DNA of 64,000 bases from Vitrella brassicaformis CCMP3155 (lineage: Eukaryota > Protista > Chromerida): positions 1 through 64,000 of the forward strand of contig CDMY01000292.1 in NCBI GenBank assembly GCA_001179505.1, read 5' to 3'. Of the stretch, positions 1 through 31,100 are shown piece after piece. A program made the position numbers and the translations under genes. Every line of letters starts with the position of its first letter. Positions within the stretch are counted from its first letter, which is position 1. A model generated the notes under the pieces. That model saw only the letters and a program-made list of their open reading frames with translations. It made no database searches and was not told the DNA's origin.

Positions 1-149
1 AAACCCTAAACCCTAAACCCTAAACCCTAAACCCTAAACCCTAAACCCTAAACCCTACACCCTAAACCCTAAACCCTAAACCCTAAACCCTAAACCCTAA
101 ACCCTAGACCCTAATCCCTAAACCCTGAACCCTAAACCCTAAACCCTAA
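1..149 (-). repeat. Telomeric repeat array (CCCTAAA)n, i.e. TTTAGGG on the minus strand; chromosome left end
   Basis: About 21 tandem aaaccct units at the very start of the window. A few variant units (acaccct, agaccct, aatccct, gaaccct) occur, mostly toward the inner boundary. Confidence 0.98.
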
Positions 150-240
150 GGTGGTACGTTGAGGGACAGACGTGTGTGTGTGTGTGTCCTGGGAGGGGTG
201 TGACTGTGTTGGATTGAGTCAAGTGGCTGATCGCATTCAT
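150..240 (+). pseudogene. Telomere-truncated remnant (last 3 codons, stop and 3' flank) of the intronless gene family found at 32108, 45340, 52160 and 60801
   Basis: g-gtg-gta-cgt-TGA-gggacagacgtgtgtg matches g-gtg-gtg-ggg-TGA-gggacagatgtgtg (32108 copy) and g-gtg-ctg-gga-TGA-gggacagatgtgtg (60801 copy). The next segment gactgtgttggattgagtcaagtggctgatcgc matches gactgtttgattgagtgaagtggctcatcgc downstream of the 45340 copy. Confidence 0.75.
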
Positions 241-11100: not shown

Positions 11101-12127
11101 GTGCCTGCGTCTGTGTCGTGTGCTTTCAGGGCTGCACTGTCCGTCTACATTGATTACTTGAAGACGCACAGGCACTTTCTTGACGCCGTCGTAACCGGTG
11201 CGGGTCTATTCAGGAGAGACACGTCCATCTCCGCATGTGTCTCTGTCTGTCTGTCTGTCTGTCTGTGTTTTGCCCTCCGAAGATCTTGATATGCCCCAAA
11301 TGAACGGAGCCGAGCTTGGCAAGCACCTCCACGATGTGCACCATCTCTACCGAGAGGAGGCTCTCCGACTGGGCTATGGCATCCAGAACCCAACCTTTCG
11401 CATGCTCCAGCCGGCCAACCTCCCCCACCCCACCAGCAGCCATGCCTCGGTCCCTCTTCTCGCCACCATCCCGCAATACCTGGTGGACTCTCTCGTGCGC
11501 CACCTGCAGTCGGTTTTGGACGCAATAGAGCAGCCACCAGCAGAGGCTGACACGAGTGGAGAGAACGAAGACTTCGAACTGGTCCTCACTGGATCGACGA
11601 AGCAGTCGGCGACCCACGGCGGGAACGAGGAGTTATCGGTGATGTCTTCGTTCAGCCAGCTGGCCAGGGGCCTCAGCCCGCAGATGGTGAAGGAGCTGAT
11701 GAATGAAGTCAATATTCGTGGGGGCAGCCGGCGGTCGAGCCTTAAAGGCGATGAGATCACCGCGCCCACTGACGGCACGACCCCAAATCGGCGGATCTCG
11801 CTGGCTGGAGTGCCTCATCCGCCGGCTAGTGACAACCAGGGTGTCGTAGTAAAAGGGCTGCTGCCCTGCCCACCTCCAATCGTCCTGGTGAGTGCTTTTC
11901 GCTTTGTCAGCTAATATGGAATGCATTGCATTGTGTGTGTGGTGAGGTACATGTGTGCAGGTGACGGGTGCGAATCCGCAGTTCCTCAAACGCCTCGAAA
12001 AGACCGTCTTCACCGCTGTCGTGGAGAAAGGTCGTGTATGACGTGACAAACATTCTTGCCGACATTCATATATGCCGCATTGTGTATGTCTGCAGGCAAA
12101 ATGAAGCGACTCAAGGAGCTGTTTTGA
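8106..12127 (+). CDS. Membrane-bound hybrid sensor histidine kinase (multi-TM input, HisKA, HATPase_c, receiver), multi-exon
   Basis: Hydrophobic helices at 8452-9040. H-box LATMHHELKNGLHVM (about 9216-9260). N-box NNAIKF, G1 VTDSGIGID and G2 STGLGLSY. Receiver LLLVDDIEFIR ... AVVT|DLDMPQMNG ... PPIVLV|TGA ... AVVEK. Stop TGA at 12125-12127. Confidence 0.9.
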
Positions 12128-12726
12128 TATACGTGGATGAGCTGGCTGATCAATATCGATCTGTAGGGGAGCAAAATCGGGCTGCCTGTGCTTGCCCCAC
12201 AAGGAGGCAAGCGCGAGTGCATCATGTATGGCTCGGGTTTTCACGTATTTTATGTAACAGCTGCACTGCTGCAGACCGTAGCCGACTGTGCTGCGCCGGG
12301 GGACTTTGACTGAGCGCTCTTAATAATGAGCCTCTTATCGACTGTATTTCTGTGCGTGTGTGTGGCATTCTAGTGGTCCTGTTGCATGTAAGTAAGCACG
12401 CAAGCGTGTATTTGTCATTGTCTGTGTCCCCCTTCCTCCCTCGACTCGAGCTGCTTCCCCCCACCTCTCTCTATCTATATGGATTTCTATATGACTTTTT
12501 TCGAGGTAGTTTCTGAGCACATCTCCGCAGATGGTGAGGTCACCATCGTTGAACTGGTATGGCCGCGACCAGCCCCAAGTGCCGAAGCTCTTGCGACGTC
12601 CGTGTGTATGCCATTGAATGAGTGACGGGAATTACCTTGCATGTCTCTGAGGCGAGCTGGAAATTGGGGCCCTGCAGGAAGATCTATGTCTTTGTGAATA
12701 TTCTCTTTGTGAACTCCAAGAGCCAA

Positions 12727-15700
12727 ATGTTGCTTCCCATGGTCCTACTGACAGCCGCATTCTTCGCCGCTGCTTTGATCGTGTCGTCGCTGCCGGCAGC
12801 TGAGGCATGGGGCAGACGGCTGCTGCCGATCAAGACGCCACGCTCCGCTGCAGCCCGCAGTCGGCCTGCAGCCCCACAGAGATACGCTCTTCTGGCGGGC
12901 GACAGAGGCCTTGCTATGCGGCTCACCAATCAGAAGCGAGGAGAGAATATGAGCGAAAGGAGACGATTGTCAGTCAAACCAAATGACCTGACAATGACGT
13001 TTCCTGCCCTTCCAATCCTTCCCGAGGAGGTCGCATGATAACGCACACACGCCGCCTCCGTCGGCCGACACATACCCATATCAATCAGAGGTGTGTGTGT
13101 GTGTGTGTGCGTGTGTGTGTCCACAGGACTTCGATGATAGCAAGGGTGAGAAGGCGAATGGGGGTGGATGCACACTTTCCGCGTTCAACTCATTTTGTGT
13201 CTCTTGTAAGGAATTAAGATTCGTGCCTGGATGCGGCTGCATGGCCTCAAGATCAAGCCTGACGTGAAGAAAGATGGTCATCGAAGGTATTGGGTTCCGC
13301 TGCTATCTGTTGAGGGGAGCCACTCAGAAGAGATGCGTTCTTTGAGGAGCCAGGAACCGCCTTTCTCGCCTGTGGCGCTCGTGACAGCCCTAAAGGGAGA
13401 GCTTTACGGCAACCGAACTGCCTCTTGGGAGCTGTGTTGCGCTTCTAAAGTGGCAGACAATTCCTCTCGCCAGACGGCATCGGGCTTCAACTGGATGTCA
13501 GATTATATAATCTGCATGCCATTCATTCCACAGCGGAGTTCAGCAGCAAATGATATGTCCTTCGAGGCGTCCTTCTCGTGGACTCACATCGCTTGCCAAG
13601 CGGAAGTCAGAGAAACGCATGGCGACAAAAATGCGGGAACAAACAACACCAACCACCAAGCGCAAAACAACAGCTTCTCCCTTACGATACTGGTGAATGG
13701 CACCCTCGCGCGGCAGAGCACTCTGAAGATCCCCCCTGACCCTGATGAGTGGCTGTCGAAGAGTTATAACCACACAAACGCAAGTTGGCTATCGTCTGTG
13801 ATCGATGCAGACTTAAAGTCTACACATGTCATTCCCAACTTGGAGAGGCGGGTCGCCTTCCAAGCGCTGGAGGGCGTCAGGAGCTTCCGGGCAGCGAATG
13901 AGATGACAGTCAGCTTCTCTGGGCTATACCAGAGACTGCCTATGCCTCCCCAGCTGCCGGCTTTTCTTTTTGCAGTGGAAGCATCTGGAGATATGACGGC
14001 GAAAGAGAATTGGCTTATCGTGCAGGACGCCGACACGGGTTTCTCACTTACCGGGGTGGCCAGCACAATGCTGAACGGTGTCTTAGCAGAGATCGAGACG
14101 ACACCAGCATACAGGATGGCTCGAGATGGCGCTTTTGTCTTCGACATTGAAGTCAGCCAGGCAGATCATCCACACACACGACACACACATCCCTGCTCAT
14201 CGGTCTGTGTGTCGATGTGTGTGGCCTGCCTGCCTGCCTGCCTCCAGTTCGACAGCGTACGAGCTTGGAAAGACGTCGGCTCGGAGGAAGAGGGCGAAGC
14301 GAGACAACAGGCAGGGACACCATCCGCCCTCCCACATTACACGTGTTGCGTCTCTATGTGTGTGCGTGTGAGCAGACTCGCGCGGACGTCCTTTACATTC
14401 GACACATAAAGGTGAGGTGAGAACGGAGGGGGAGAGGCAAGATGGGTGCAAACGTCGGCTGGGTCTAAAAAAGCGATTTTGGTTTTTTATTTTCCTATTT
14501 TTGTTTTTTAATCCTATAAAAAACAACAACAACAACAACAGAATTTGTTTGCCTTTCTCGATTTCGATTTGGACGTGGACGTTGCTCCGGCACTGCACAC
14601 GGGCGGCGGCTTCAGAGTGCTGGAGAGGGTCTCACAGACCTACAGGTGCCCCAACGAGGCAATGCCATGTGGGACAACATGAACACACGCATGCACATAA
14701 TTCACATAAATGCTGTCCGATGTTGTCTGTTCGTGTGCAGCGACTGGGGTCTGCCATTCTTCGAGAATAGCACTGCAAGGCTTCCGCTCCAGCACGAGTT
14801 GACAGTCTTTCTTCAAGTGTCGTCCTGTCCCGACCCATCAAGACACGTATTCGACAGAGACGCGGAGGCTGTTGTGCTTCTAAGGGCGAGCCTGTATCCG
14901 GTCTACAGTGACATGCCAAGTTGGAAACATGCAGCTGTGGAGATGCTGCCTGAACAATTTCCCTTCGGTGTCCAGTTTGAGATTACGCAATTTCCTTTCG
15001 GTGGAATGCTCTTTGAGGTGTCCAGCCTAAAAGCCATTGATGACAAGAGCGTCAGCCGTGGAGTATGCGCGGGCTATTATCAGGTGGAAAGAGGACCTCC
15101 CGTTCACAGCCGAGATCTGCTGGGTGATGCAGAAGACGACCTTACGTATGAATCGAGGCCTTGTATTGTTTTCAATGCGACCCAATCGTTGGGGCGTCTC
15201 TGTCGGCACAAGAAGGGAGACAAGGTCAAGGATCTCCGGATAAGAAGCTTCGTTGACCTCTTCGGTTGCGGCACGGTGTTGCCCATGCTCTTAGTGCTGA
15301 GGGATTCGGCTGAAGATCTTGAGTGTTTCAAGTATGCTGTTCGTGCTGATACCAGATCGGATGCTGATGCATTTGTGCTACCAGACGTCCGACCAGCTGT
15401 CGGCTCTACGAGTGGGTCGGCTTTGTCATCTGAAAGACAGCCTAAGTGCCATCAGACGGCTCCAGTGCGTGTGACCATACACGATGAGAAACGACTACCG
15501 AAGCCTGATCCATTCGGCCAGATGTCTCCGATATGTCTCGGTAAGGGAATCGTATCATACTTAGCTCTTCACGCCTGCCTTTATTCGGCCTCCTGCCTGT
15601 GCGTGGTCTGATCAGGTCTCATTCGCACCAGTCTGACCCTCGATGCCCGCACAGACGCGACCAGAGAGAAATGTGAGACAGGCATATAAAAAGTAACATG

Positions 15701-18700
15701 CAAGATACACATGTCATGTCTCCTGTGCGTGTGACTGATGCAGGCGGGAGTTTGAGTCTGAAAGGCGACATGTGGGAGTTGGCATGCTTGCCTACCGCGG
15801 CATCGAGAAAACGGTGAATGAATTTCAGGTGAGAGAAAGCCATCCGTGTGCGTGTGGACTCTTGATTATTGCGAACATATGTTTACAGCCGACATTTCAT
15901 TCGTACTTGAACAGTGCTGTGGGCAATAAGTGTGAACTCGACTTCGCAATGATGCCTCTCGACTTCGATACAGTCTATGAAGCGGTGACTCATCCGCACG
16001 CGCATAAATAGGTTGCATCTGATTGGAGCCTTTCTGCTTCCTCCAGGCATCCGCAGGCCAGGTGCGTCGGGCTGACGGCGCCGTGGACATCGATTTCATC
16101 TTTACAAATGCAGGTGCAGCCAATGCGCATTGATTGAAATGAATGAAATGATGAGCTGACTGTCCGACTGACTGATCATGATGTGTACGTGCAGGAATGA
16201 ATGTCGAATTCGAAACAATGTACAGTAGTCGAGCACTGCTTTCCCTAACCAAGATTCGGTACGCAACCCTGAATTACGGTCCACACATCTCGCTGGCATC
16301 TGTGTGTCTCCCATCAGTCTTGGCATTCTCTTGCCCTTCTTCGGAGCTGTGCTGTTCACGAGGCGAAATGCCACGGACATCAACAATATCACCGATTGCA
16401 GAGGTGTGTCATCACTTTGCAAGACAGCTCCAATCAATTATGAGCGTCCCTCTCTCTGACAGGCAAGGTGATCTGTGGAGTGGATCGTCGTGCATTTGAC
16501 GCGTGGCATGTTGGCTGGCACGAGATGCTTAGACGAGTACGTGACGACGAAAATTAGACCAGCGCCCAATATCCTTTGTGTGTCAATGCTTCTGGGCTGG
16601 TGCAGGGTATTGACCCATATCAGGACGCTTCGAAAATAGAGTACTTCCATACTGGAGACAAGGTCAGTGAGACGCAGAGACGCAGGCGATCATGAGGCTG
16701 CTTCTGAGTGCTGTAATGTCATCGACGTAGACTGCGCTTGCCGTCCTCGACGGGAGATGTGATTGCGGCACAATCCGATCATCTACACTGGAGTCAATGG
16801 ATGCCGAAGGCACTATTCGCATCGATGATGTGAGGCTCTTGGTGACAAGGACTCATCCGAACTTCCCTTTTCTTTGCTCCACTGACCTGTATCCAGGTGA
16901 TGCGCATTGTCAATTTGTCATATTGTCTCAACCTGGTGTGTATTGTTTGGTGGTCAGAATGGGTGTTGTCGGCTCTCCAGCATGTTCCGGAGCGCTTGGC
17001 GATGAAAGTCGCACTCAGCCTGCTCTTCATCAATAGCTCTGATGCCACGGCAGAGTGGGCGAAGCAAAGAGGCAATTACGCAGGTTTGACATCAAAATTT
17101 TGGAGACACGGTGATGTCTCGCCACGTCTGCATGTCAATGCTAGGCTGGACTCTTCCGCAAAACGCCGCTGTGGTGCGCCTGATGCTTACAGGTGAGCAC
17201 AATCTTACACAATGCAGACTGCCTGGCAGACTGCCCGGGAGAAATGTACGTGAGTCTCTTGCATTTCCGCAGAGCTCGGCGTATTGACGGCTCTCGGCAG
17301 CTGCGAGGCGGGTTACGTGATGCACAGCAATGGCGACTGCGAGCAATGTCCCCCTGGCACATTCAGTGAAACAAAGGGAGCCCGAGCCTGCCGCATGTGC
17401 CCCTCTGGCAGCTTTGCAGCGGAGCCCGGTAGCACAAAATGTGAGAGGTACAGCTTAACGGCATTTTCGATGGTGAAAGTAAAAGAAAATCGCATGTTTC
17501 CCCTATCAGGTGCGAGCTGGGCTATTACATCGATCGTCCCGGAAGAGATTCCTGCAAGCAATGCCCGGGAGTGCGTACAACAGCCTATCCGGGCGCCTCG
17601 TCAGATGACAGCTGCGTCTGCCCGACGGCAAGCGACAGCATTGTGTCAATCTGCTTCTTTTCAGTTGTCTCCGTCCCCTGTCACACGCAGGGCACGTATG
17701 AGAAGCCGATTGCATCGAGAGACAGGGAAGAGGGCTTCAAAGAATGCTTTGACTGCCCGCATGGTCTGAGGTGCGAGGGCAGCGACATGCTCCCCAGCGT
17801 CGCGGCAGGCTATTGGGTGGACACGCGAGAATGGCTACCAGGAAACGCCTCTCTAAGATATGACTTTGAGCCCGACATCTACGCCTGCCATCCTCACGAG
17901 GCCTGTCCAGGCGGCCCGCTGGACAGTCGGATGATCGAGAAGACGGCAAATCAGCCGAAGGCTGCTGCAACCATGCCCAGGATCTGCAGGTCCAGTCTGT
18001 GAAAGCATCTTTGCAGTCACGCTCCCAACAGAGCATAGTGCTTCTGTTTTGTTCCCGCTCAGGGAAGGTGTTGATCAGACTTTTATCGCGTGCAGTAAAT
18101 GCCTACCTCGATACTTCTCAAGGCGAGCTGGTGGGTCAGCTGACTTGTTCAGGACTTGAAATAGGTGCACATGATATCGCTTCAGGCTTCTGCGAGCCAT
18201 GCGGCCATACCCCTGCAGTCGTCCAGATGGCGTGGGCAAGCATTCTCCTCCTGCTGACCATGGCGTTTTTTGGATTCATCCACTTCTACATCAACCGCGT
18301 TAGCAATGCCAGCGGAAGACCCGATGGTACTTTGATTAAAAAGTAAGAGAAAGGTGAGAAGCCCAAACCTCCACTAAATTCACTCACAGACACGAAACTA
18401 CCTGCGTGTGTCTTCCTCCCCCCCTCTCTCTCTGTATGTCTCTCTCTTCCTCCATATTTGTCCCATGTAGCCTCGGCCAGGTTTTCTCTCTCGCCGTGCG
18501 GTATCTCATGACAGTCGGAATCTTCGTGTCGTTCAATGTCAGCCACTATTCATTAGATGTCCTTCACACGGCATCTTTGACGAACATGCATCTTTTTCCG
18601 CTTTCCGCAGGTTCCGTGGCCTGAGCCTTCATCATCCTTCATCGCCGCAGGTGCCGTGATGTCTCTGTCGAGGAAGGGAACGTCTGACTCTCATCTACGC

Positions 18701-21670
18701 TCTCTTTGCCCAACCATCAGGCTCACTGATTGATCTCGACCTTCGCCACCTCAGGCCCGAATGCTTCCTACGTGTCGAGATGACGCCGCCAAGATACTAC
18801 CTACCGCGGCTCCTGCTACCCATCATGATAATAGGGATATTTCCCCTCATGTGGGCACTCTCGCTAATCCCATGGGGGTTCAAGAGGCTTCTCTTTGGCA
18901 CCACATCTGTGGGCCGCAGCGACAGCCAGAAATGGCACGAGTCAGAGATGTCGAGTGTTGGCATCTTCGTGAGAACCCCTGCCCTCACACAGCTTCGACC
19001 AACGCTCAGTGCTCCGGCAATGCAGATCAACTATAGCGAAAGAAGAGCAACTATAGCGAAAGAAGAGCTGGCGGTATCAGCAGCAGTGAAAAGGGTACGT
19101 GTTGCCCACATACAATGCACTTCTTAAAGTTCTTATTAAGATTCAATCTCGTCTGTTTTTTCAGACTCTAGTGGTGGCTGGAAGGGCTTACTACGCTGGG
19201 TAAAGCAGCAGCCGGATCGCATGCGAAAAGGGACCACCAACGTGTGCTACAGCCTGATGGAGTGGTCGCCAATGAGTCTGAATCGGCTGTGTAACTCAAT
19301 GGTCATGATGGTGATGAGAAGGATACGAATGAGGCACGAAAGAGGCACCAATCAGCTGCAGCGTTTGCATTCATTGGTGTCTTAGATCTACTGTATCTAC
19401 ATCCCCATGGTCGTGAGCGTCACTTGCATCTTCCAAGTGAGCGTGGCGTGCTGAGATCACACTCAAGCTTGTACACACATATGCAGACAGCCACACTCAC
19501 GTGAGCCATCTCGTGGTCCATCAGTGCTTTCGCTACCCCAACGGGCGCTTCAGCTTAATCCACATGCCCTATGTAAGTATGTGCCCGTCTACCTTTCCAC
19601 CAATCTTGACACAGCTCATGTCTCTGTCCGTCTCTGTGCGTCTCCTCTCTCCTCTCTCGGTGCGATCAGACGCTGTGTTATGATGCGAAGTGGTGGAGCT
19701 CCCTGTTTCGCTTGGCGTGATTGGCGCTGTTGTCTACATCGTGGGTGTATTGGTCTTCTACAGCGTCATTTGGTACGTGGCGCCAAATAGCTGGCCGAAG
19801 AGTGCCGCGTTTAGAGTGAGATTTCGCTATTTATTTGAGTCATGCCGAGCGGTAAGTGAGCGCCACCATATGAGCAACCGCCCCACTAGCTGCATGACTT
19901 TGCGTTTGTATGGTGATTGCAACGTAGGATCGCTATTGGTGGATGCTCTTCAATTTGGCGAGGAATACACTGCTAGCGACGGTGCCCATCTTCTTATGGC
20001 ACGACGGGGCGTTGGAATGCTTTTGCGCCAAACTGATCATCATCTTCTCTCTCGTCTGCCATCTGCTTGCTTGGCCTTGGAGAACGCCCGCCAGTAAGAA
20101 AAAGATGTTTCCCTCTCCATGTCTCTGTTTTTGCCGCGATTCTGCATGCAGGCAACTACCTCGAGCTCATGTACAATGTTCTCTTGTTGATTCTCCTGAT
20201 GTACGTGCACATTCTTTTTCACGAAAAAGCGAGCCCCTATTGATATATATATGTGGCATATGCTCACCAGGGTCGGGTCATATTGGGCTGAACGACGGTC
20301 AGGATCGCTCCCATTCTTCCAGAGGCTTGTCTGGACTACCACTTTGATTGGCATTGTCGGAACTGTCGCGGCTGTGGGGTGCGCCAGCCACAGAAAGTAC
20401 ATGAACCACCAGCCAACACATATGTTTCCTTGTTTTTCTTCAGGTATTCGGTGCTTTGGACTTGCAAGCGTGGTCCATTGAGGCAGGCGCGGGCCAACTT
20501 TGTGCAGGTGGATGCACACAGAAGAAACCCTCAACTCTCATCGTGCTGCATTGTACGCTGCTGGCTCGTGCAGCGGGTTGTGGACGACATGCATATCACA
20601 TCGCATGCGATTGTCAGCTTCCTCCAGGGCGGGCACCGACAGCCGCTGCCATCCCTACCCTCTTTTAGAGAGCATGGCGACGGCACTGCACTTGACAGAA
20701 GCATGGCCCCCTCGAGCCGCGTGGATGAGCCACTGCCGCGCGAGGTTTATTTGAAGGCAGCTGTGAATCGGCTACACCGCGTCGATCTCAAGGCCATCAA
20801 CGATGCGCACCAGGTGAATGGCCATCAGGAGAATGGACCTGACACCGTCGAGCTGTGAATCGGCTCATCAGGTCATTGCGGTTGAAATTCTGCCCTTCAT
20901 CGAGCTCCTTGACTCCCAGTCGAGGCGGTACTTAGCCCAGCACAGCGCTTGTGAATGCACACATACTTCTGCACGATGTCTCTGCCACAAATGGATGTGT
21001 GTGCAGGCCGGGCATGCCAGGCGACAGCCGGCACGCCCGCCGCCGCACTCGGCGTATTTTTCTCGCCGAATTTGACCACGTCTATGACCATCTTCTCAAG
21101 ACCGCAGGCCACCTCAACCGTCCGGCCGACACTAGTGGTAACCTTGCTCGGGACCTTCCCCGGCGCAGGAGCCGCAGCTTTTCCGAAAGAGCCGCGGACG
21201 ACGGCCAAGACGACGACAGCAACAATGCAGAAAGTGATGTGCCGGCGCCCTCTCGACCTGATGAAGGAATGGCGCCTCCTTGTGAGCCGCCCGCCGCCGC
21301 GTCGCTGCCATGGACAACGGGAGACACCAAGCTAGACCCCACCCGACTCAGGCGAGGGAGCTTCGCCTCTTGCAGCACGATCAGCGACTTTTATCAATTG
21401 GAAGCCGCCAAGAAGGATGGTAGACCGCCGCAGCACCGCAAGGCGGACATACGACGAGAAGACACCCATGGGTTTGTGAGAGACACGATGTGGCTTGAGC
21501 GGAAGTGCTCTCCACTGCTGTGGCCGGCCGAACCAAGTCAGACTCACCCGGCTCGGTCCGATCGTGTGCGGGCGTCTTCTGCGAGGCCTCAGCAGCAGCT
21601 GGAGGGCGATGATGCAATCGAGGGCATATCTGTGTCGAGCGGTGGCAGCCACGATTCTCTATCTTGCTGA
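12727..21670 (+). CDS. Large putative cell-surface receptor: signal peptide, unknown ectodomain, PhnD/phosphonate-type solute-binding domain, Cys-rich repeats, about 7 TM helices and a cytoplasmic tail
   Basis: Signal peptide MLLPMVLLTAAFFAAALIVSS. SBP exons at 15760-17195 (VGMLAYRGIEKTVNEFQ/PTFHSYL..PLDFDTVYEA/IDFIFTNA/FFGAVLFTRR/GKVICGVD/GIDPYQD/FPFLCSTDLYP/VPERLAMKVALSLL). CxxCPxG repeats (CEQCPPGTFSETKGARACRMCPSGSFA; CFDCPHGLRC..VAAGYW). TM exons at 18200-20400. Whether 12.7-15.6 kb and the 3' tail belong to the same transcript is unproven. Confidence 0.6.
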
Positions 21671-21712
21671 CGAGAAAGGAGAGAGACACGTATTATCAGA
21701 CACGGTGTCTCC

Positions 21713-22012
21713 NNNNNNNNNNNNNNNNNNNNNNNNNNNNNNNNNNNNNNNNNNNNNNNNNNNNNNNNNNNNNNNNNNNNNNNNNNNNNNNNNNNNNNNN
21801 NNNNNNNNNNNNNNNNNNNNNNNNNNNNNNNNNNNNNNNNNNNNNNNNNNNNNNNNNNNNNNNNNNNNNNNNNNNNNNNNNNNNNNNNNNNNNNNNNNNN
21901 NNNNNNNNNNNNNNNNNNNNNNNNNNNNNNNNNNNNNNNNNNNNNNNNNNNNNNNNNNNNNNNNNNNNNNNNNNNNNNNNNNNNNNNNNNNNNNNNNNNN
22001 NNNNNNNNNNNN
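21713..22012. other. Assembly gap (300 N)
   Basis: Run of N. Confidence 1.
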
Positions 22013-22342
22013 TCCCCCCCCCCCCCCTCTCTCTCCGGTGTGCGCAGCATTTGTTTGGTTGTTTGCCTGTCGAGTGAGAGCATGCACAGCATGCACATTG
22101 TGCTCTTTCGCATCGGTGGCGGAGATACACACGCTAGATATGACATACGCGACCATACGCGATATCCATATAAATCATGTGACGTGCAGTAAATGCGGAT
22201 TGATCGCGCTTAGAGTCTGGGGTCAGTTCGAAGTCTGAAGCATCCTCCCACTCAGCGACCGACCAATCCCCACATACACATACACAAAAGCATCGATCCA
22301 TCGATGGCTATTCTGTGGCACCCGTGGCCGGACATGTGTCTC

Positions 22343-24536
22343 CTATAGCACTGACTCAATGAAAAATAAAATGCAGGCAGCCATGGATAGATTGATGAGG
22401 ACAGCTGGTCTCCTGCTCGCCGTGATGAGACTGCAGTCGTGCTCTTCCGAGGGAGCCGTAGTGGATTGTGTAGGGGCGGGCGAGTGAGGTTTCGTTGCGG
22501 TGTACAGGCACACCAGCAGTGATGACGAACGAGCCCAGCCAAGGAAAGCCAAAACCGCTTGAACAACACAAGAAATGTCCTTCTGGTCTTCACGAGCTGT
22601 CTTCACCCACCACGTATGAACTTCACGAGCTGGCCCACACGTATGCCAGTGGGACGGGCTCGCCCGTGTCACCGTCGACGTATGCCTGTGCCTGGCGGAG
22701 GATGTCGCAGCCATATATCTTCAGGGGCCGGCAGTGTGCTTGACGAAGACGCTGCGGTGGATGCAGTCTGCGCGAACAGACAGGAAAGAAACGGAAGAAG
22801 CACATCAGACAATCAATTTGTATGTTCCCAATGTGTCCTCATCCCCCCTTATTGTCGAGGAGCCCCGGCCAGATGTAGCCCATTGCCGTCTTCTCCATCC
22901 ACTTGAGTCATCAGCTGGGGCTCTCCGCCTTCTTCGACCTCCATCAGCAGCTCTTGAGCAGCTCAGCCACTCACTGCACACACATGCATATGTCTCCGCG
23001 TGAGTGTCTCACGTGTACAGCCACCCACCTGCACAACTTGTTTGAGCCTCTGGTGCAGGGTCCATTCCTCCTGGTCGAACTGAAACACGCACCGCTCTTT
23101 CAACGGGATGCGTTGAAGAGCTGGTATGGGGTGCACGGCCAACATGACACTTTGACGCAGCATGCACCTGGAGGGTCAAGTGCCTCTAATATAAAATGTC
23201 GGCAGCGATGCCCAGCGCCCAATTCCTCCTCGGCACCGGGGGGCGGATGCGAGCCAGCGTGATTTCATATATGAGCTGGGCCGCGATGGATACCGCCTGC
23301 CACTCGGCTGGCCTCCACCATGTCGACAACCTGGTCCATCAGCGAGGTAGCTCTCGTGCACCCAGGCCCTCTCGACGGCCAGCTCTGCACAGCGTCAAAG
23401 GGCGAGATGGAGAGACACAAAAGAGAGAGAGACTGTCTGCCTTTTCTATGTACAGGGGAGTTTGTCGAATTTGCGCTGGCGGGGGATGGGCGTGCGGGGC
23501 TGCGGCTCCTCGATGAGTCTCCATACCCTTCCTCATCGCCCCACGCATGCAGTTTCGCTCTCATGGCCCCGTGTTCTTGTCGTTGTTGCCTTGAGTGCAG
23601 CCATCGCCTGCCATTGGTCTCCATAAAGTGCCAGTTTGACCCTGGCCTCTCCCCTACGCCTGGCGACTGCAGCGCCTTAAGGGCGCGGTTCAGCTTGTCG
23701 CCGAGGTGGTGGAAGTGCCAGGGCCGGCAGGCATTCTTGCCCCCCTTCGCTTCCAGCGCGTAGTAAAGATAGATGGGAGCGTCTGGATTGCGAAGGGAGC
23801 CAAGCGGGCCGATGGCGAGGTCGATGACTGCACCAGCACCGGGCCGTCACTCAATGAGGGCCTCCATCGCCGCCAGGCCGTCTGAGAACTTCCGCTCACC
23901 CGCCAGGCCGCAAAACGCCTTGCAAGCTGGCTGAATCCACGGCTCGTCTCTCTAAGTCTTTCTAAGGACTCTTAAAGTTGAGGACAAAAGCGCCACACCC
24001 CAGACAGGTTGGCTGTCTCCGAGACGATGAGGAACACCTTTGATGACCGCGAGTGTGATGAGGAACACCTTGCCCCACGGGGTGTTGCGGGAAAAACGAG
24101 TGCATCTGTTGGGATCTGCATACATACATACATCGCATCACAACGCAGCATGACCCGCCTGCACTGGCCCGTTCTCCCTCTCTCTCCGCAGTCTACTTTC
24201 GAGTGTCACGACGATGGGGTTGTTGATGTCTTGGCCGCTGTCGCCGAAATACGATTGCGGCGTGGCGGCAGATGACGGGATGGGTGGACGGCCGAAAAAC
24301 TGGACGTCCTGCCGGCGATGGTACGACTGGACGTTGTTGAATGTGCGGAGTAGGTCCTCCTGCAGCAATTTCATCTGAGGTGGGTCTGCAGCTGTCCTCT
24401 CTGCTCCCTTCAGAGCCGCATCGAAGGCAGAGGCATTCATTGCGACGTTGTCGATGAACACAACTTTCTCCTTCGCACTCAGTGCCGTCAACATCACGAC
24501 TCGGTGGTCTGTTGTGTCGTGCTGCCTTCCGTCCAT
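22343..24536 (-). CDS. Spliced hypothetical protein (boundaries uncertain)
   Basis: Protein-like exons RVVMLTALSAKEKVVFIDNVAMN...ESRL and DEPWIQPACKAFCGLA|VIDLAIGPLGSLRNPDAPIYLYYALEAKGGKNACRPWHFHHLGDKLNRAL. The latter two are joined by a phase-1 GTGAGC..GTGCAG intron that removes an in-frame TGA. No family recognised. Confidence 0.45.
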
Positions 24537-28100: not shown

Positions 28101-31100
28101 GCTGACCCTGATGTGAGCGCACACACACATCCCCCTCCCCCCTTTCCCCCCCTCTCTCTCCCACCGCCCATTCATCATGGTGTCATGCGATGCATCAGGT
28201 GTGGATAGGGTGCTGTCCGTTGTGGTTCCGGCGTCACCAGCCCTCCTATGAGGACCAGTTCAGGGATATCGCCGGCAGAGAGAGAGACGAGGTAGGGTGG
28301 GCAAAGAGAGACAGATGGGCCATTACACACACACACACACACCCAGCCACATTTGCCCCGTCTCTGTCTGTCTGTCTGTGTCTATGTGCGTGTCAGCTGG
28401 TGTGCACGCTGCCCGCCTTGATGGACGAGCAGGCCCGGCTGTCTGCCGAGGGCGACGGCGTGTCTGCGCGCATCTACGAGATCTGGATCGCCTACGTCAC
28501 CAGAATGATCGACGAAACGGTGAACTCGGGCACGAGAAGAGACGAGAGGAGGTCACGGATGGGCACATGAGTGTGATGAAAATTGTAGGAGGAGCGGGCC
28601 GCTGCAGAGGCATCGTCGGCCTCTGCTGCTGCCGCTGCTGCTGCTGCTGCTGCTGCCGGTGAGTGAGGGATGCACACCCACACAGACACATGGATGGACG
28701 AATGGCCCGTTTCTCTCCCTCTCTCTCTGTGTGTGTGTGTGTGTATGTCAGCTGCGCCCCCAGCAGGGCCACCAGCACCAGAGCCACCAGCACCAGCAGC
28801 AGCTGCAGCAGCGGCAGTATCGTCCCCGCCCCCTCCACCAAACAACGCAGCTGCTGCTGCTGCTGACAACGGTACCCACAGACTCACCGTCCGATAAACA
28901 CGTGAAGCGTGCAACGTGTCTGTCCGGTGTCATCTATCTATGTGTGCAGGCGGAATGGGGCAGGGGCCGGGCACACTGACCGATGAGACAGGTCGGTGAG
29001 AGGGCGAACGTGATCCGCACTCACAAAGGCAATGCACAGACTGCTGTTGTTCTGTTCTGTCTGCTTGTGCAGAGGTGATCCCATCTCGCCCCGACACACA
29101 GCCGCCCTCTCCCTCACCAGCAGCTGCTGCAGCAGCAGCAGCATCGCAGAACAACGATATTGCTGATGACGACGGCGATGAGCCGATAGACCTTACCCAA
29201 GTGAGAATGGACAGCGAGAGGGAGGGAGGAAGGGAGGGAGAGAGGGGGAGAGATTGGGGGGAAGCCGCGCATCCCATCTCATCCACAGCCACGATCACAT
29301 GGGGGTTTGACATATGGACCTGCAGGACTCTCCCCCCCTGGCGATTCCGCCCCCATTGGTGTCGCGCATCCCACTGGCTGAGAGGCTGGCGCAGCGGAGG
29401 GGAGGCGGCACCAACACAAACAATAGCCATAGCAATGGTATGCCCATTGGCACTCTTGTGGAGTGGCTGGCTCTCTTTCTCCCTCTCCCTCTGTGTGTCT
29501 GTGTGTGTGTGTGTGTGTGTGCGTCAGCCCCCCCGCCCCTTTTCGATGCCGACGACGCTCCGCCAGGCACCCACAGACACGCACAGATACTCCCCCATCC
29601 TTCAACACGTCTGTCTGTCTGTCTGTCTGTCTGTCTGCAGGCCCCCCTCCCGCCTTCTCCGCCCATCCTCAGTCGTCACAGCACGGTGCTGCTGGTGGTG
29701 GTGACGCCTCGCAATCCCAATCCCAATCCCAATCGCAGTCACAGAGGGAGAGGGAGAGAGCGCCACCACGAGCCCCCCCACCACCACCCCCACCAGCAGC
29801 AGCACCACCGCCACCGCCACCAAAAGGCCACAACAACGCCCCCAGACGCAGCCCATACCAATCTCAAGACCACCCACAAGGCACCTACGCAGAAAGAGCG
29901 CGACAAGCGGCGCGCAGAGAAATGATGGAACATGCACACGCCGAGCTCGACGGTGACGGTGATGATGACGATTTCGAGCCTCAGAGGAGGCCCTCTGCGC
30001 GCGCAGAGGGCCGTGCCGAGAGGCTGGAGGCCGTCTTCGACAGCGACGATTCGGATGAGGACATGTGCACACAACAGGAGGGTGGCAGGGGTGGTGGAAA
30101 GGGGTCGCAGAGTGCCAGTGCCAGCCAGTCTGCCAGCGCATCGGCATCGGCATCGGCATCGGCATCGGCTGCTGCGGCTTTTGCGTCATCTTCACAGCAC
30201 TCTCAGGGTTGGTGGGGGGTGGACGCGGAGAGATCTGTGTCCATGACCGAGTGATTCGTGTGCGTGTGTGTGTGTGTGTGTGTGTAGGTCCTGCACAGCA
30301 CAAGCGGAAGCAGCAGGGGGCAGGCGGGGCGAAACCCAAGAGGCTCAGAAAGAACCAGCCTGTGTCAGGNNNNNNNNNNNNNNNNNNNNNNNNNNNNNNN
30401 NNNNNNNNNNNNNNNNNNNNNNNNNNNNNNNNNNNNNNNNNNNNNNNNNNNNNNNNNNNNNNNNNNNNNNNNNNNNNNNNNNNNNNNNNNNNNNNNNNNN
30501 NNNNNNNNNNNNNNNNNNNNNNNNNNNNNNNNNNNNNNNNNNNNNNNNNNNNNNNNNNNNNNNNNNNNNNNNNNNNNNNNNNNNNNNNNNNNNNNNNNNN
30601 NNNNNNNNNNNNNNNNNNNNNNNNNNNNNNNNNNNNNNNNNNNNNNNNNNNNNNNNNNNNNNNNNNNNNGAGAGAGAGAGAGAGAGAGACATATGTGTGT
30701 GTGTGTGTGTGTGTGTGTCAGGTTACTGCCCTGCTCGGTTTGAGGACATTGAGTGGGCCAAGCTGGACGACCACATTCTCAAGGAATGGCTCCTTCACTT
30801 CGGAAGAAGCGTACACCCTCCCTCCCCCCCCAACACACACACACACGGCATGTGTGTGTGGATGTTCAGACGTCCGCGATGAGCCGCAGTGCGATGATCG
30901 GCTGGCTGGAGGGCCTCGCCGCCTACGTATTAGACAGCACAAGGCCCGAGGACTGCACGAGGGACCCAAACCGGACAAGCGCTGCCGCTGCCAATGGTAC
31001 GTCAGCTGTGCCCGTGGACAATGGGATCTCTCGCCCCTCATGTGTTGTGTGTGTAGGTGGTGGTGGTGGTGGTGGTGGCGGCAGGAAGGGCCACAACAAG

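What the first reader, a model, noticed from the sequence alone, without database searches (positions are those of the whole stretch)
12727..21670. Class-C-GPCR-like receptor built from a bacterial PhnD-type binding domain, Cys-rich repeats and a 7TM-like region
Seen: spliced exons at 15760-17195 reconstruct a PhnD/phosphonate-type periplasmic binding domain (VGMLAYRG..PTF..YL..PLDF..DFIFTN..FGAVLFTR..GK.ICGVD..GIDP..GTIRSSTLE..FPFLCSTDLYP..VA.SLL). CxxCPxG repeats and several TM helices follow, ending in a ..WPWRTP../N.LEL motif. Established: class C GPCRs use Venus-flytrap + Cys-rich + 7TM, and PhnD-like domains serve as sensor modules of bacterial kinases. Inference: an independently assembled nutrient or phosph(on)ate-sensing receptor with an extra ~700-aa unknown N-terminal ectodomain.
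Basis: partly seen in the sequence, partly recalled or inferred. Interest (0 to 1): 0.75.

Follow-up and report, generated by a model that had tools for sequence, protein, structure and literature searches.

The report
Binding-protein sensor on a nine-helix receptor
The alga Vitrella, a free-living relative of malaria parasites, carries a roughly 2,090-residue surface protein that joins a bacterial-type solute-binding domain and cysteine-rich repeats to a nine-helix membrane core of the CRMP/TRP-like kind, not to a GPCR, and this points to small-molecule sensing in a receptor family that parasites need for invasion.

Summary
A gene of about 35 exons runs on the + strand from the ATG at 12727 to the stop at 21670. 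The genome is Vitrella brassicaformis CCMP3155 and is not human.

Ten micro-exons (15744-17192) rebuild a PhnD/TtrS-type solute-binding domain and splice in phase into two Ephrin_rec_like repeats. A colinear paralog on contig C887 conserves about 1,700 residues in the same order, with dN/dS near 0.16 in every module. That supports one gene unit.

The membrane part is not 7TM. It has nine hydrophobic segments. Its relatives hit Pfam PF06011, the fungal Flc/Pkd2 "TRP" family. They also share the core of Vitrella CRMP-type genes. Sister genes in Vitrella carry an ANF_receptor Venus flytrap, Ephrin repeats and the same core.

So this is a modular family of binding protein, Cys stalk and nine-helix core. 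It resembles class C GPCRs only in its ectodomain design. The N-terminal 750 residues remain unassigned.

The window copy has a 1-nt frameshift near 19712 and a 20-nt tandem duplication (19024-19068). These are either assembly errors or signs of a young pseudogene. The C887 copy lacks both.

I did not search or fold the joined spliced protein.

The parts
12727..13029 (+). Exon 1: start codon, a signal-peptide-like hydrophobic N-terminus (about 12727-12807), and the conserved YALLAGDRGL and TFPALPILPEE blocks.
   Evidence: Translation and hydropathy peak of 2.53. Conserved in the C887 paralog.
13126..15523 (+). Unassigned N-terminal ectodomain, about 650 residues. Exons: 13126-13144, 13211-14151, 14248-14310, 14376-14411, 14542-14645, 14741-15523. 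One candidate GC-AG intron lies at 14311-14375.
   Evidence: 45-74% identity to the paralog, dN/dS 0.17. Frame-preserving junctions. No Pfam match, no homologue of 220-698 aa, Atlas blank. The AF2 model is unusable at pLDDT 38.7.
15744..17192 (+). PhnD/TtrS-type (PF12974-like) solute-binding domain of about 280 residues in ten micro-exons: 15744-15828, 15889-15984, 16047-16113, 16195-16258, 16318-16403, 16463-16536, 16606-16662, 16731-16896, 16958-17083, 17145-17192.
   Evidence: Phase-consistent GT-AG splicing. PF12974. TIGR01098 and NF040750 at colinear profile positions. Atlas gave 30 of 30 PF12974 clusters. dN/dS 0.14.
17273..18217 (+). Cysteine-rich stalk. Ephrin_rec_like repeat 1 is exon 17273-17447. 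Repeat 2 plus the juxtamembrane Cys-rich module is 17510-17989. Further Cys motifs lie in 18063-18130 and at the start of exon 18186-18342.
   Evidence: PF07699 at E 2.8e-8 and 1.4e-7, above the cut-off. In phase with the last PhnD exon. 69-75% identity to the paralog.
18218..20396 (+). Nine-segment membrane core. TM1 18218-18292, TM2 18472-18534, TM3 18795-18881, TM4 19386-19436, TM5 19699-19779, TM6 19937-19999, TM7 20018-20074, TM8 20160-20200 continuing into the next exon, TM9 20326-20382. Motifs: the C...C loop FQC/CFRYPNG...TLCYDAKWW, FRVRFRYLF...DRYWW, ARN, WPWRTP and NYLEL.
   Evidence: Hydropathy. Alignment to family members. Paralog to P0001, E 8.9e-18 against 1.8 billion proteins. 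Relatives hit PF06011. Family profile against CRMP-type loci.
19024..19068 (+). 20-nt tandem duplication in the TM3-TM4 cytoplasmic loop exon. It shifts the ancestral frame. Frame is kept only if the donor at 19099 is used instead of GTACGT at 19095.
   Evidence: TRF: period 20, 2.2 copies, 96%. Junction enumeration. Absent from the paralog.
19698..19714 (+). 1-nt deletion relative to the paralog inside the TM5 exon (19670-19851). Reading ...TLCYDAKWWSSLFRL runs into a stop, and the conserved sequence resumes one frame over at GVIGAVVYIVG.
   Evidence: DNA alignment. tblastx frames. No canonical splice rescue.
20444..21670 (+). Cytoplasmic tail of about 350-400 residues. Exons: 20444-20507, 20574-20813, and 20936 or 21007 to 21670. 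Conserved blocks RRIFLAEFDHVYDHLL, RRGSFASCSTISDFY and FVRDTMWLERKCSP. Stop at 21668-21670.
   Evidence: Conserved blocks, dN/dS 0.15. No Pfam family. The paralog ends at the same C-terminus.

Best explanation
One intron-rich gene (12727-21670, + strand, about 35 exons, about 2,090 residues) of Vitrella brassicaformis encodes a surface receptor with its N-terminus outside the cell.

The domain order is:
- a signal peptide;
- an unassigned domain of about 750 residues;
- a PhnD/TtrS-type type-II periplasmic-binding-protein domain;
- two Ephrin_rec_like repeats and a juxtamembrane Cys-rich module;
- a nine-helix core of the PF06011 ('TRP', fungal Flc/Pkd2) / CRMP superfamily;
- a cytoplasmic tail of about 350-400 residues.

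Shown here: the anatomy, the single conserved gene unit, and the family relations.

Inferred: the binding domain closes on a small extracellular solute, probably an oxyanion. The rigid Cys-rich stalk passes that movement to the nine-helix core. The core then either opens a cation (Ca2+) path, as proposed for fungal PF06011 proteins, or signals through its tail and partners as proposed for apicomplexan CRMPs.

The gene is one of at least nine Vitrella genes with this core. Some of them carry an ANF_receptor flytrap instead of the PhnD-type domain.
For: Genome identity:
- 72,700,666 bp in 1,064 scaffolds, matching the published Vitrella CCMP3155 assembly.
- P0001 = CEM29628.1 sits on a contig of 300,752 bp, which is the length of C677.

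Single gene unit:
- 51 colinear conserved blocks with the C887 paralog run from signal peptide to stop.
- dS is saturated and dN/dS is 0.14-0.17 in all five modules.
- The PhnD exons splice in phase into the first Ephrin exon.
- Frame-preserving GT-AG junctions exist for the rest of the gene.

Binding domain.

Cys repeats.

Membrane core:
- Nine segments.
- A phmmer search with the paralog found only 10 relatives. Several are Vitrella proteins by their source names.
- These relatives hit PF06011 at E 3e-6 to 8e-10, some above the cut-off.

Same architecture in sister genes:
- P0016 and P0013 are single annotated proteins with ANF_receptor, Ephrin repeats and the TRP core.
- P0002 is a UniRef entry with the same span.

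Wider family:
- Thecamonas, Perkinsus, and an uncultured member with 13 Ephrin repeats, NCD3G, DUF7630 and TRP.

CRMP link:
- A GFLxNGY pattern gave 7 own-genome hits against 0 for the control pattern.
- ORFs at four of those loci align to the family profile over about 75-125 residues at E 3e-5 to 5e-4 with Z = 1e6.
- The same four ORFs hit PF06011; three reach the 28.5-bit cut-off at 29.5-32.8 bits.
- Published CRMP cores show the same order of motifs by eye.
- CRMPs have nine TM helices and Ephrin/EGF-like repeats.
Against: - No transcript evidence exists for this gene. Neither it nor the C887 paralog turned up among the predicted proteins or transcriptome ORFs searched.
- The PF12974 hits are below Pfam's cut-off, because only single exons could be scored.
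- The window's own membrane exons give no PF06011 hit, so that link is transitive.
- The window copy has two frame-disturbing features.
- The AF2 model of a family member was too poor to compare folds (pLDDT 45).
- Ligand, channel activity and partners are all inferred.
- The identity of the Vitrella CRMP-type loci with published CRMPs rests on motif comparison by eye.
Confidence: 0.62

Rival explanations
1. The window copy is a young subtelomeric pseudogene. The architecture is real and functional only in the C887 paralog.
For: A 1-nt deletion in the TM5 exon and a 20-nt tandem duplication that shifts the ancestral frame. Both are absent from the paralog. The gene lies about 12.6 kb from a telomere repeat. 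No matching transcript ORF was found.
Against: Long-term dN/dS is 0.16 in all modules. All other junctions keep frame. A donor 4 nt downstream compensates for the duplication. Short tandem duplications and single-base indels are typical of gap-closing in short-read scaffolds, and this assembly was gap-filled.
Confidence: 0.35
2. It is a binding-protein-dependent transporter or transceptor. The tethered PhnD-like domain captures a scarce anion and hands it to the nine-helix domain for uptake, as in bacterial transporters with fused binding proteins.
For: PF12974 proteins are mostly ABC-transporter binding proteins. Yeast PF06011 proteins were first described as flavin carriers.
Against: A stalk of about 300 Cys-rich residues separates the binding domain from the membrane. 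Sister genes swap in ANF_receptor, FG-GAP or other adhesive modules on the same core. One relative carries a cytoplasmic TIR domain, which is a signalling feature.
Confidence: 0.12
3. It is a true class-C-like GPCR whose heptahelical domain couples to G proteins.
For: The ectodomain order, flytrap then Cys-rich then membrane, mimics class C. There is a weak NCD3G hit. PANTHER labels some CRMPs GPCR-like, as reported in PMC9670195.
Against: No 7tm family hit. Nine segments. Relatives match PF06011. The CRMP authors themselves say CRMPs are not bona fide GPCRs.
Confidence: 0.03
4. Two genes lie here: a secreted binding protein (12727 to about 17200) and a separate Cys-rich membrane protein (about 17270 to 21670).
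For: No RNA evidence links them. Micro-exon genes are often mis-joined.
Against: The last PhnD exon splices in phase into the Ephrin exon, with no stop and no second signal peptide. The order and spacing are kept in the paralog. Sister proteins are annotated as single chains spanning flytrap to core.
Confidence: 0.05

Closest known systems
Alveolate CRMPs (cysteine repeat modular proteins; TgCRMPA/B, PfCRMP1-4, Tetrahymena CRMPs)
   Same: A large modular ectodomain, with Ephrin-receptor-like or EGF-like Cys repeats next to the membrane. Nine TM segments and a cytoplasmic C-terminus. The same order of core motifs: the C...C loop, FL..(Y/F)....(Y/W)W, R(K/N), and P(F/W).....N.LE. 'Many diverse' members are reported in chromerids.
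   Different: The ectodomain carries a bacterial-type solute-binding domain instead of lectin, Kringle or MAR modules. The core is a divergent 'WPW' subfamily. Vitrella is free-living, so a role in host invasion does not apply. The link to published CRMPs is statistical only through Vitrella's own CRMP-type loci.
Fungal PF06011 'TRP' proteins (S. cerevisiae Flc1-3, S. pombe Pkd2, Cryptococcus Flc1)
   Same: Relatives of the membrane core, and the Vitrella CRMP-type ORFs, match the C-terminal half of PF06011 (positions about 230-420 of 426). Several matches are above the cut-off. These proteins are implicated in Ca2+ homeostasis.
   Different: Fungal members have an ML-like TRP_N lipid-binding head, not a binding protein plus Cys stalk. 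The window's own exons do not reach PF06011 directly.
Class C GPCRs (mGluR, CaSR, GABA-B, taste receptors)
   Same: The design logic is a Venus-flytrap binding domain, then a Cys-rich linker, then a multi-pass membrane domain. Sister Vitrella genes even use the same ANF_receptor flytrap family.
   Different: The flytrap here is type II (PhnD-like), not type I. The linker is Ephrin_rec_like, not NCD3G. The membrane domain has nine helices of another superfamily, not 7tm_3.
Bacterial TtrS/ThsS sensor kinases with a Phosphonate-bd sensor domain
   Same: Two exons match the TtrS model at colinear positions. A PF12974 domain is used there as a sensor rather than for transport.
   Different: There are no HisKA or HATPase domains. 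The output module here is a eukaryotic nine-helix core.

Membership tests
Class C GPCR | 7tm_3 heptahelical domain | tested here: not met
   No 7tm Pfam hit on any membrane exon or on the paralog's open frames. Nine hydrophobic segments. Relatives hit PF06011.
Class C GPCR | ANF_receptor (type I) Venus flytrap | tested here: not met
   No PF01094 hit in the window. The binding domain matches PF12974, which is type II. Sister genes P0016 and P0013 do have PF01094.
Class C GPCR | NCD3G nine-cysteine linker | tested here: not met
   18.3 bits against a cut-off of 38.9, lying under an Ephrin_rec_like hit of 33.8 bits.
PhnD / Phosphonate-bd (PF12974) binding proteins | Sequence match to the family profile along the domain | tested here: met
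   Scored exon by exon. PF12974 positions 149-202 at E 1.2e-4 and 4e-5. TIGR01098 positions 186-240. NF040750 positions 5-55 and 175-215. 30 of 30 Atlas look-alikes are PF12974. Each hit is below the whole-domain cut-off because only single exons could be scored.
PhnD / Phosphonate-bd (PF12974) binding proteins | Bilobed fold and anion-binding pocket residues | not testable with these tools
   This needs the joined spliced domain, which I did not fold or search. A PDB sequence search with the largest exon frame found nothing.
CRMP / PF06011-type nine-helix receptors | Ephrin-like or EGF-like Cys repeats directly before the membrane domain | tested here: met
   Two PF07699 hits above the cut-off at 17273-17620, followed by a Cys-rich module and TM1.
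CRMP / PF06011-type nine-helix receptors | Nine TM segments, N-terminus outside and C-terminus inside | tested here: met
   Nine segments by hydropathy and by alignment to family members. The signal peptide and the odd number of segments give the topology, which is an inference.
CRMP / PF06011-type nine-helix receptors | Homology of the core to CRMP cores | tested here: inconclusive
   The family profile aligns to ORFs at four Vitrella CRMP-type loci at E 3e-5 to 5e-4 with Z = 1e6. That these loci are CRMPs rests on motif identity with published cores, read by eye. Published sequences could not be fed to the tools.
CRMP / PF06011-type nine-helix receptors | Direct PF06011 match | tested here: not met
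   There is none at E <= 1 for the window exons or for the paralog's 229-aa frame. The match is met transitively through P0001, P0003, P0011 and others.
TtrS-type two-component sensor kinase | HisKA and HATPase_c output domains | tested here: not met
   No such Pfam hits anywhere in 12622-21667.

The most novel reading that the evidence does not exclude
Chromerids hold a family of ligand-gated, TRP-like (PF06011) cation channels. Their gates are bacterial-type binding proteins, either ANF_receptor or PhnD-like, mounted on a Cys-rich stalk. That would be a convergent counterpart of class C GPCRs and of ionotropic glutamate receptors. Because the core is shared with CRMPs, it would imply that the apicomplexan invasion sensors descend from small-molecule-gated Ca2+ channels, and may still be such channels.
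Probability: 0.2. Interest if true: 0.85.

Novelty: new variant of a known kind. Interest (0 to 1): 0.58.

Why it matters
CRMPs are essential for rhoptry discharge in Toxoplasma and Plasmodium. What they sense and how their nine-helix core signals are both unknown.

A free-living relative carries the same kind of core behind recognisable small-ligand binding domains. That offers a tractable way to test the sensing hypothesis, because a soluble binding domain can be expressed and screened for ligands.

The two CRMP papers I read did not mention this link. It gives a concrete mechanistic lead, namely ion flux.

The gene also adds a eukaryotic case of a PhnD/TtrS-type domain used as a receptor head.

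Tried and rejected
- Pfam, NCBIfam, a word-index homologue search and the ESM Atlas on the N-terminal exons all found nothing.
- AF2 of the largest N-terminal exon with its paralog gave pLDDT 38.7, which is unusable.
- AF2 of family member P0011 with a 17-row alignment gave pLDDT 45. I therefore ran no fold search, since matches would be meaningless.
- PDB sequence searches with the PhnD exon frame and with the family profile gave only chance hydrophobic hits to acetylcholine-receptor helices at E about 0.02.
- An own-genome scan with the TtrS model found nothing at genome-wide E.
- A scan of bacterial and archaeal genomes with the exon-H alignment found no relative.
- A word-index search with the P0002 core found only P0002 itself.
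- Rfam found nothing in 12000-22500.
- I looked for an intronless neighbouring gene, hoping to recover the public gene model through an exact-protein look-up. I saw none and dropped the idea.
- I considered rescuing the frameshift at about 19712 through an alternative acceptor. I rejected this because no canonical site keeps phase, and it would delete the conserved Cys loop.
All searches were by exon or by stop-free reference.

Full report
**What the sequence is**

The window is contig C292 of a 72,700,666-bp assembly in 1,064 pieces. Those are exactly the figures published for Vitrella brassicaformis CCMP3155 (PMC4501334). A family member found later, P0001, is NCBI CEM29628.1 of that strain. 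It sits on a contig of 300,752 bp, which is the length of C677. The window begins with CCCTAAA telomere repeats. The contig is not human.

**Checking the observation**

- The + strand from 12727 to 21670 holds many short open stretches separated by introns of 59-130 nt.
- The ATG at 12727 opens a hydrophobic, signal-peptide-like N-terminus.
They keep reading phase without a stop, from 15744 to 17447. This carries the binding domain straight into the first Cys-rich repeat.
- Frame-preserving GT-AG junctions exist for every other exon pair. The exceptions are one probable GC-AG intron (14311-14375) and the two lesions described below.
- Summing the exons gives about 6.28 kb of coding sequence, or roughly 2,090 residues.
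Everything was searched exon by exon or by stop-free reference.

**Evidence that this is one gene**

- A search of the organism's own genome with one membrane exon found a paralog on contig C887 at 77% identity.
- tblastx of the whole region against that locus gives 51 colinear conserved blocks, 1,701 aligned residues. They run from the signal-peptide exon to the last residues before the stop, in the same order and on one strand.
- Synonymous sites are saturated (pS about 0.69). dN/dS is 0.14-0.17 in each of five regions: N-terminal, binding domain, Cys-rich, membrane and tail.
- The blocks were chosen by protein similarity, so the ratio is biased downwards. Even so, uniform constraint over all modules in an old duplicate is hard to reconcile with separate genes or with noise.

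**The binding domain**

- ORF 16731-17033 matches Pfam PF12974 (Phosphonate-bd) positions 149-201 at E 1.2e-4.
- The paralog's equivalent frame matches at E 4e-5.
- NCBIfam adds TIGR01098, and also the tetrathionate sensor kinase model NF040750 at two colinear places: positions 5-55 for the first exons and 175-215 for the large exon.
- TtrS is known to use a Phosphonate-bd domain as its sensor (PMC5408782).
- A language-model look-alike search with the paralog's C-terminal half of the domain returned 30 of 30 PF12974 clusters at score 0.95.
- Each single hit is below the curated whole-domain cut-off, as expected for fragments of 20-55 residues. Together they are convincing.
- The exons add up to about 280 residues, which is the size of such a domain.
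- The ligand is untested.

**The Cys-rich stalk**

Two repeats match Ephrin_rec_like (PF07699) above the cut-off. A weak NCD3G hit lies under the first repeat and is below its cut-off. Further Cys motifs follow, up to the first membrane helix.

**The membrane region**

- Hydropathy gives seven strong segments and two weaker ones. Aligned with family members, they form nine segments with a long loop between the third and fourth.
- No GPCR family matches.
- I ran an exhaustive phmmer search of 1.8 billion representative proteins. The query was a 229-residue stop-free frame of the paralog that spans segments 4 to 7. It found only ten proteins.
- By their source names, several of these are Vitrella proteins or marine transcriptome and metagenome fragments.
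- They match Pfam PF06011 'TRP', the fungal Flc/Pkd2 family, in its C-terminal half. E values run from 3e-6 to 8e-10, and some exceed the cut-off.
- The window's own exons do not reach PF06011 directly, so this link is transitive.

**The family in Vitrella and beyond**

- P0016 (CEM29294.1) has a full ANF_receptor flytrap (E 3e-31), three Ephrin repeats and the same core.
- P0013 has ANF_receptor, four Ephrin repeats and the core.
- P0011 has Ephrin, DUF7631, DUF7630 and the core.
- A profile of the family finds at least nine loci in the genome.
- Outside Vitrella the profile finds members in Thecamonas (FG-GAP repeats) and Perkinsus. It also finds an uncultured organism's protein with 13 Ephrin repeats, NCD3G, DUF7630 and the core.
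- One relative carries a cytoplasmic TIR domain.
- So the core is a widespread eukaryotic receptor chassis with interchangeable heads. The gene in the window is the version with a PhnD-type head.

**Relation to CRMPs**

- The apicomplexan cysteine repeat modular proteins have Ephrin/EGF-like repeats and nine TM helices. They are needed for rhoptry discharge and are proposed to be host sensors. 'Many diverse' members are reported in Chromera (PMC9670195, PMC9815656).
- The published core sequences show, by eye, the same succession of motifs as this family.
- To obtain a statistical test without typing sequences, I searched the Vitrella genome for a degenerate pattern encoding GFLxNGY. It gave 7 hits against 0 for the control pattern.
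- Three of the stop-free frames around these hits read like published CRMP cores (...GFLYNGYRRSFFYWD...RPFDSRSFNILNRME). A fourth (L020) carries the FGFLYNGY..FYFWE motif but breaks off before the PFD motif.
- Frames at four loci align to this family's profile over about 75-125 residues, in register, at E 3e-5 to 5e-4 with the database size set to one million.
- The same four frames hit PF06011 at the same profile positions. Three are above the cut-off, at 29.5-32.8 bits against 28.5.
- I therefore place the gene in a CRMP/PF06011 superfamily, as a divergent subfamily.
- Direct homology to the experimentally studied CRMPs remains to be tested formally.

**Two blemishes in the window copy**

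- Relative to the paralog, one base is missing inside the exon for the fifth helix, near 19698-19714. The conserved reading runs into a stop and resumes in the next frame.
- A 20-nt unit is tandemly duplicated at 19024-19068. The sequence after it is homologous to the paralog in a different frame. The strong donor at 19095 then falls out of phase. A donor 4 nt further on restores phase.
- Both could be gap-closing artefacts of a short-read assembly. Both could also mark a young subtelomeric pseudogene.
- The C887 copy has neither, so the architecture stands either way.

**What remains unknown**

- The first 750 or so residues have no detectable relatives or fold.
- The tail has no known domain.
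- Structure prediction of a family member failed for lack of alignment depth.
- No solved structure is detectable by sequence.

**Verdict**

The gene is a new variant of a known kind: a modular CRMP/TRP-like nine-helix receptor that carries a bacterial-type solute-binding head.

Noticed in passing
window 1-150: CCCTAAA telomere repeats at the start of the contig. The receptor gene starts only about 12.6 kb from a chromosome end.
   Followed up: partly
G000:C520:98961-98981 (-), C520:149728-149748 (+), C751:6642-6662 (-), C277:118815-118835 (-), C243:97780-97800 (+), C236:80758-80778 (+); loci L019-L025: Vitrella has at least six loci with CRMP-type core motifs (GFLYNGY...YFW[ED]...RPFDSR..LNRME). 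ORFs at four of them hit Pfam PF06011 'TRP', three above its cut-off. This suggests that the CRMP nine-helix core belongs to the fungal Flc/Pkd2 family. I did not see this link in the two CRMP papers I read.
   Followed up: partly
proteins P0009 and P0015 (Logan assemblies, organism unknown): Relatives of the nine-helix core with a cytoplasmic TIR_2 domain (E about 7e-5, below the cut-off). This would be a receptor core fused to an immune-type signalling domain.
   Followed up: no
window 21713-22012: A 300-N scaffold gap begins 43 bases after the stop codon, so the 3' UTR and terminator region are missing. Similar 300-N gaps lie at 30370, 37837 and 57518.
   Followed up: no
window 13091-13120, 14224-14243, 14340-14370, 14522-14540: Introns of the N-terminal part carry (GT)n, (GCCT)n and (AAC)n microsatellites. 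Some introns present in the window are absent from the paralog and vice versa, which indicates intron gain or loss since the duplication.
   Followed up: partly
window 14311-14375 and 17628-17687: Two candidate GC-AG introns. The first is required to keep the reading frame. The second is 60 nt, so it is neutral to frame.
   Followed up: partly
G000:C669:2873-9647 (-): This is the locus of P0016/P0002, with ANF_receptor, three Ephrin repeats and the nine-helix core. The UniRef entry P0002 is only 83-96% identical to the assembly exon by exon. It may therefore come from another Vitrella strain or from a transcriptome.
   Followed up: no
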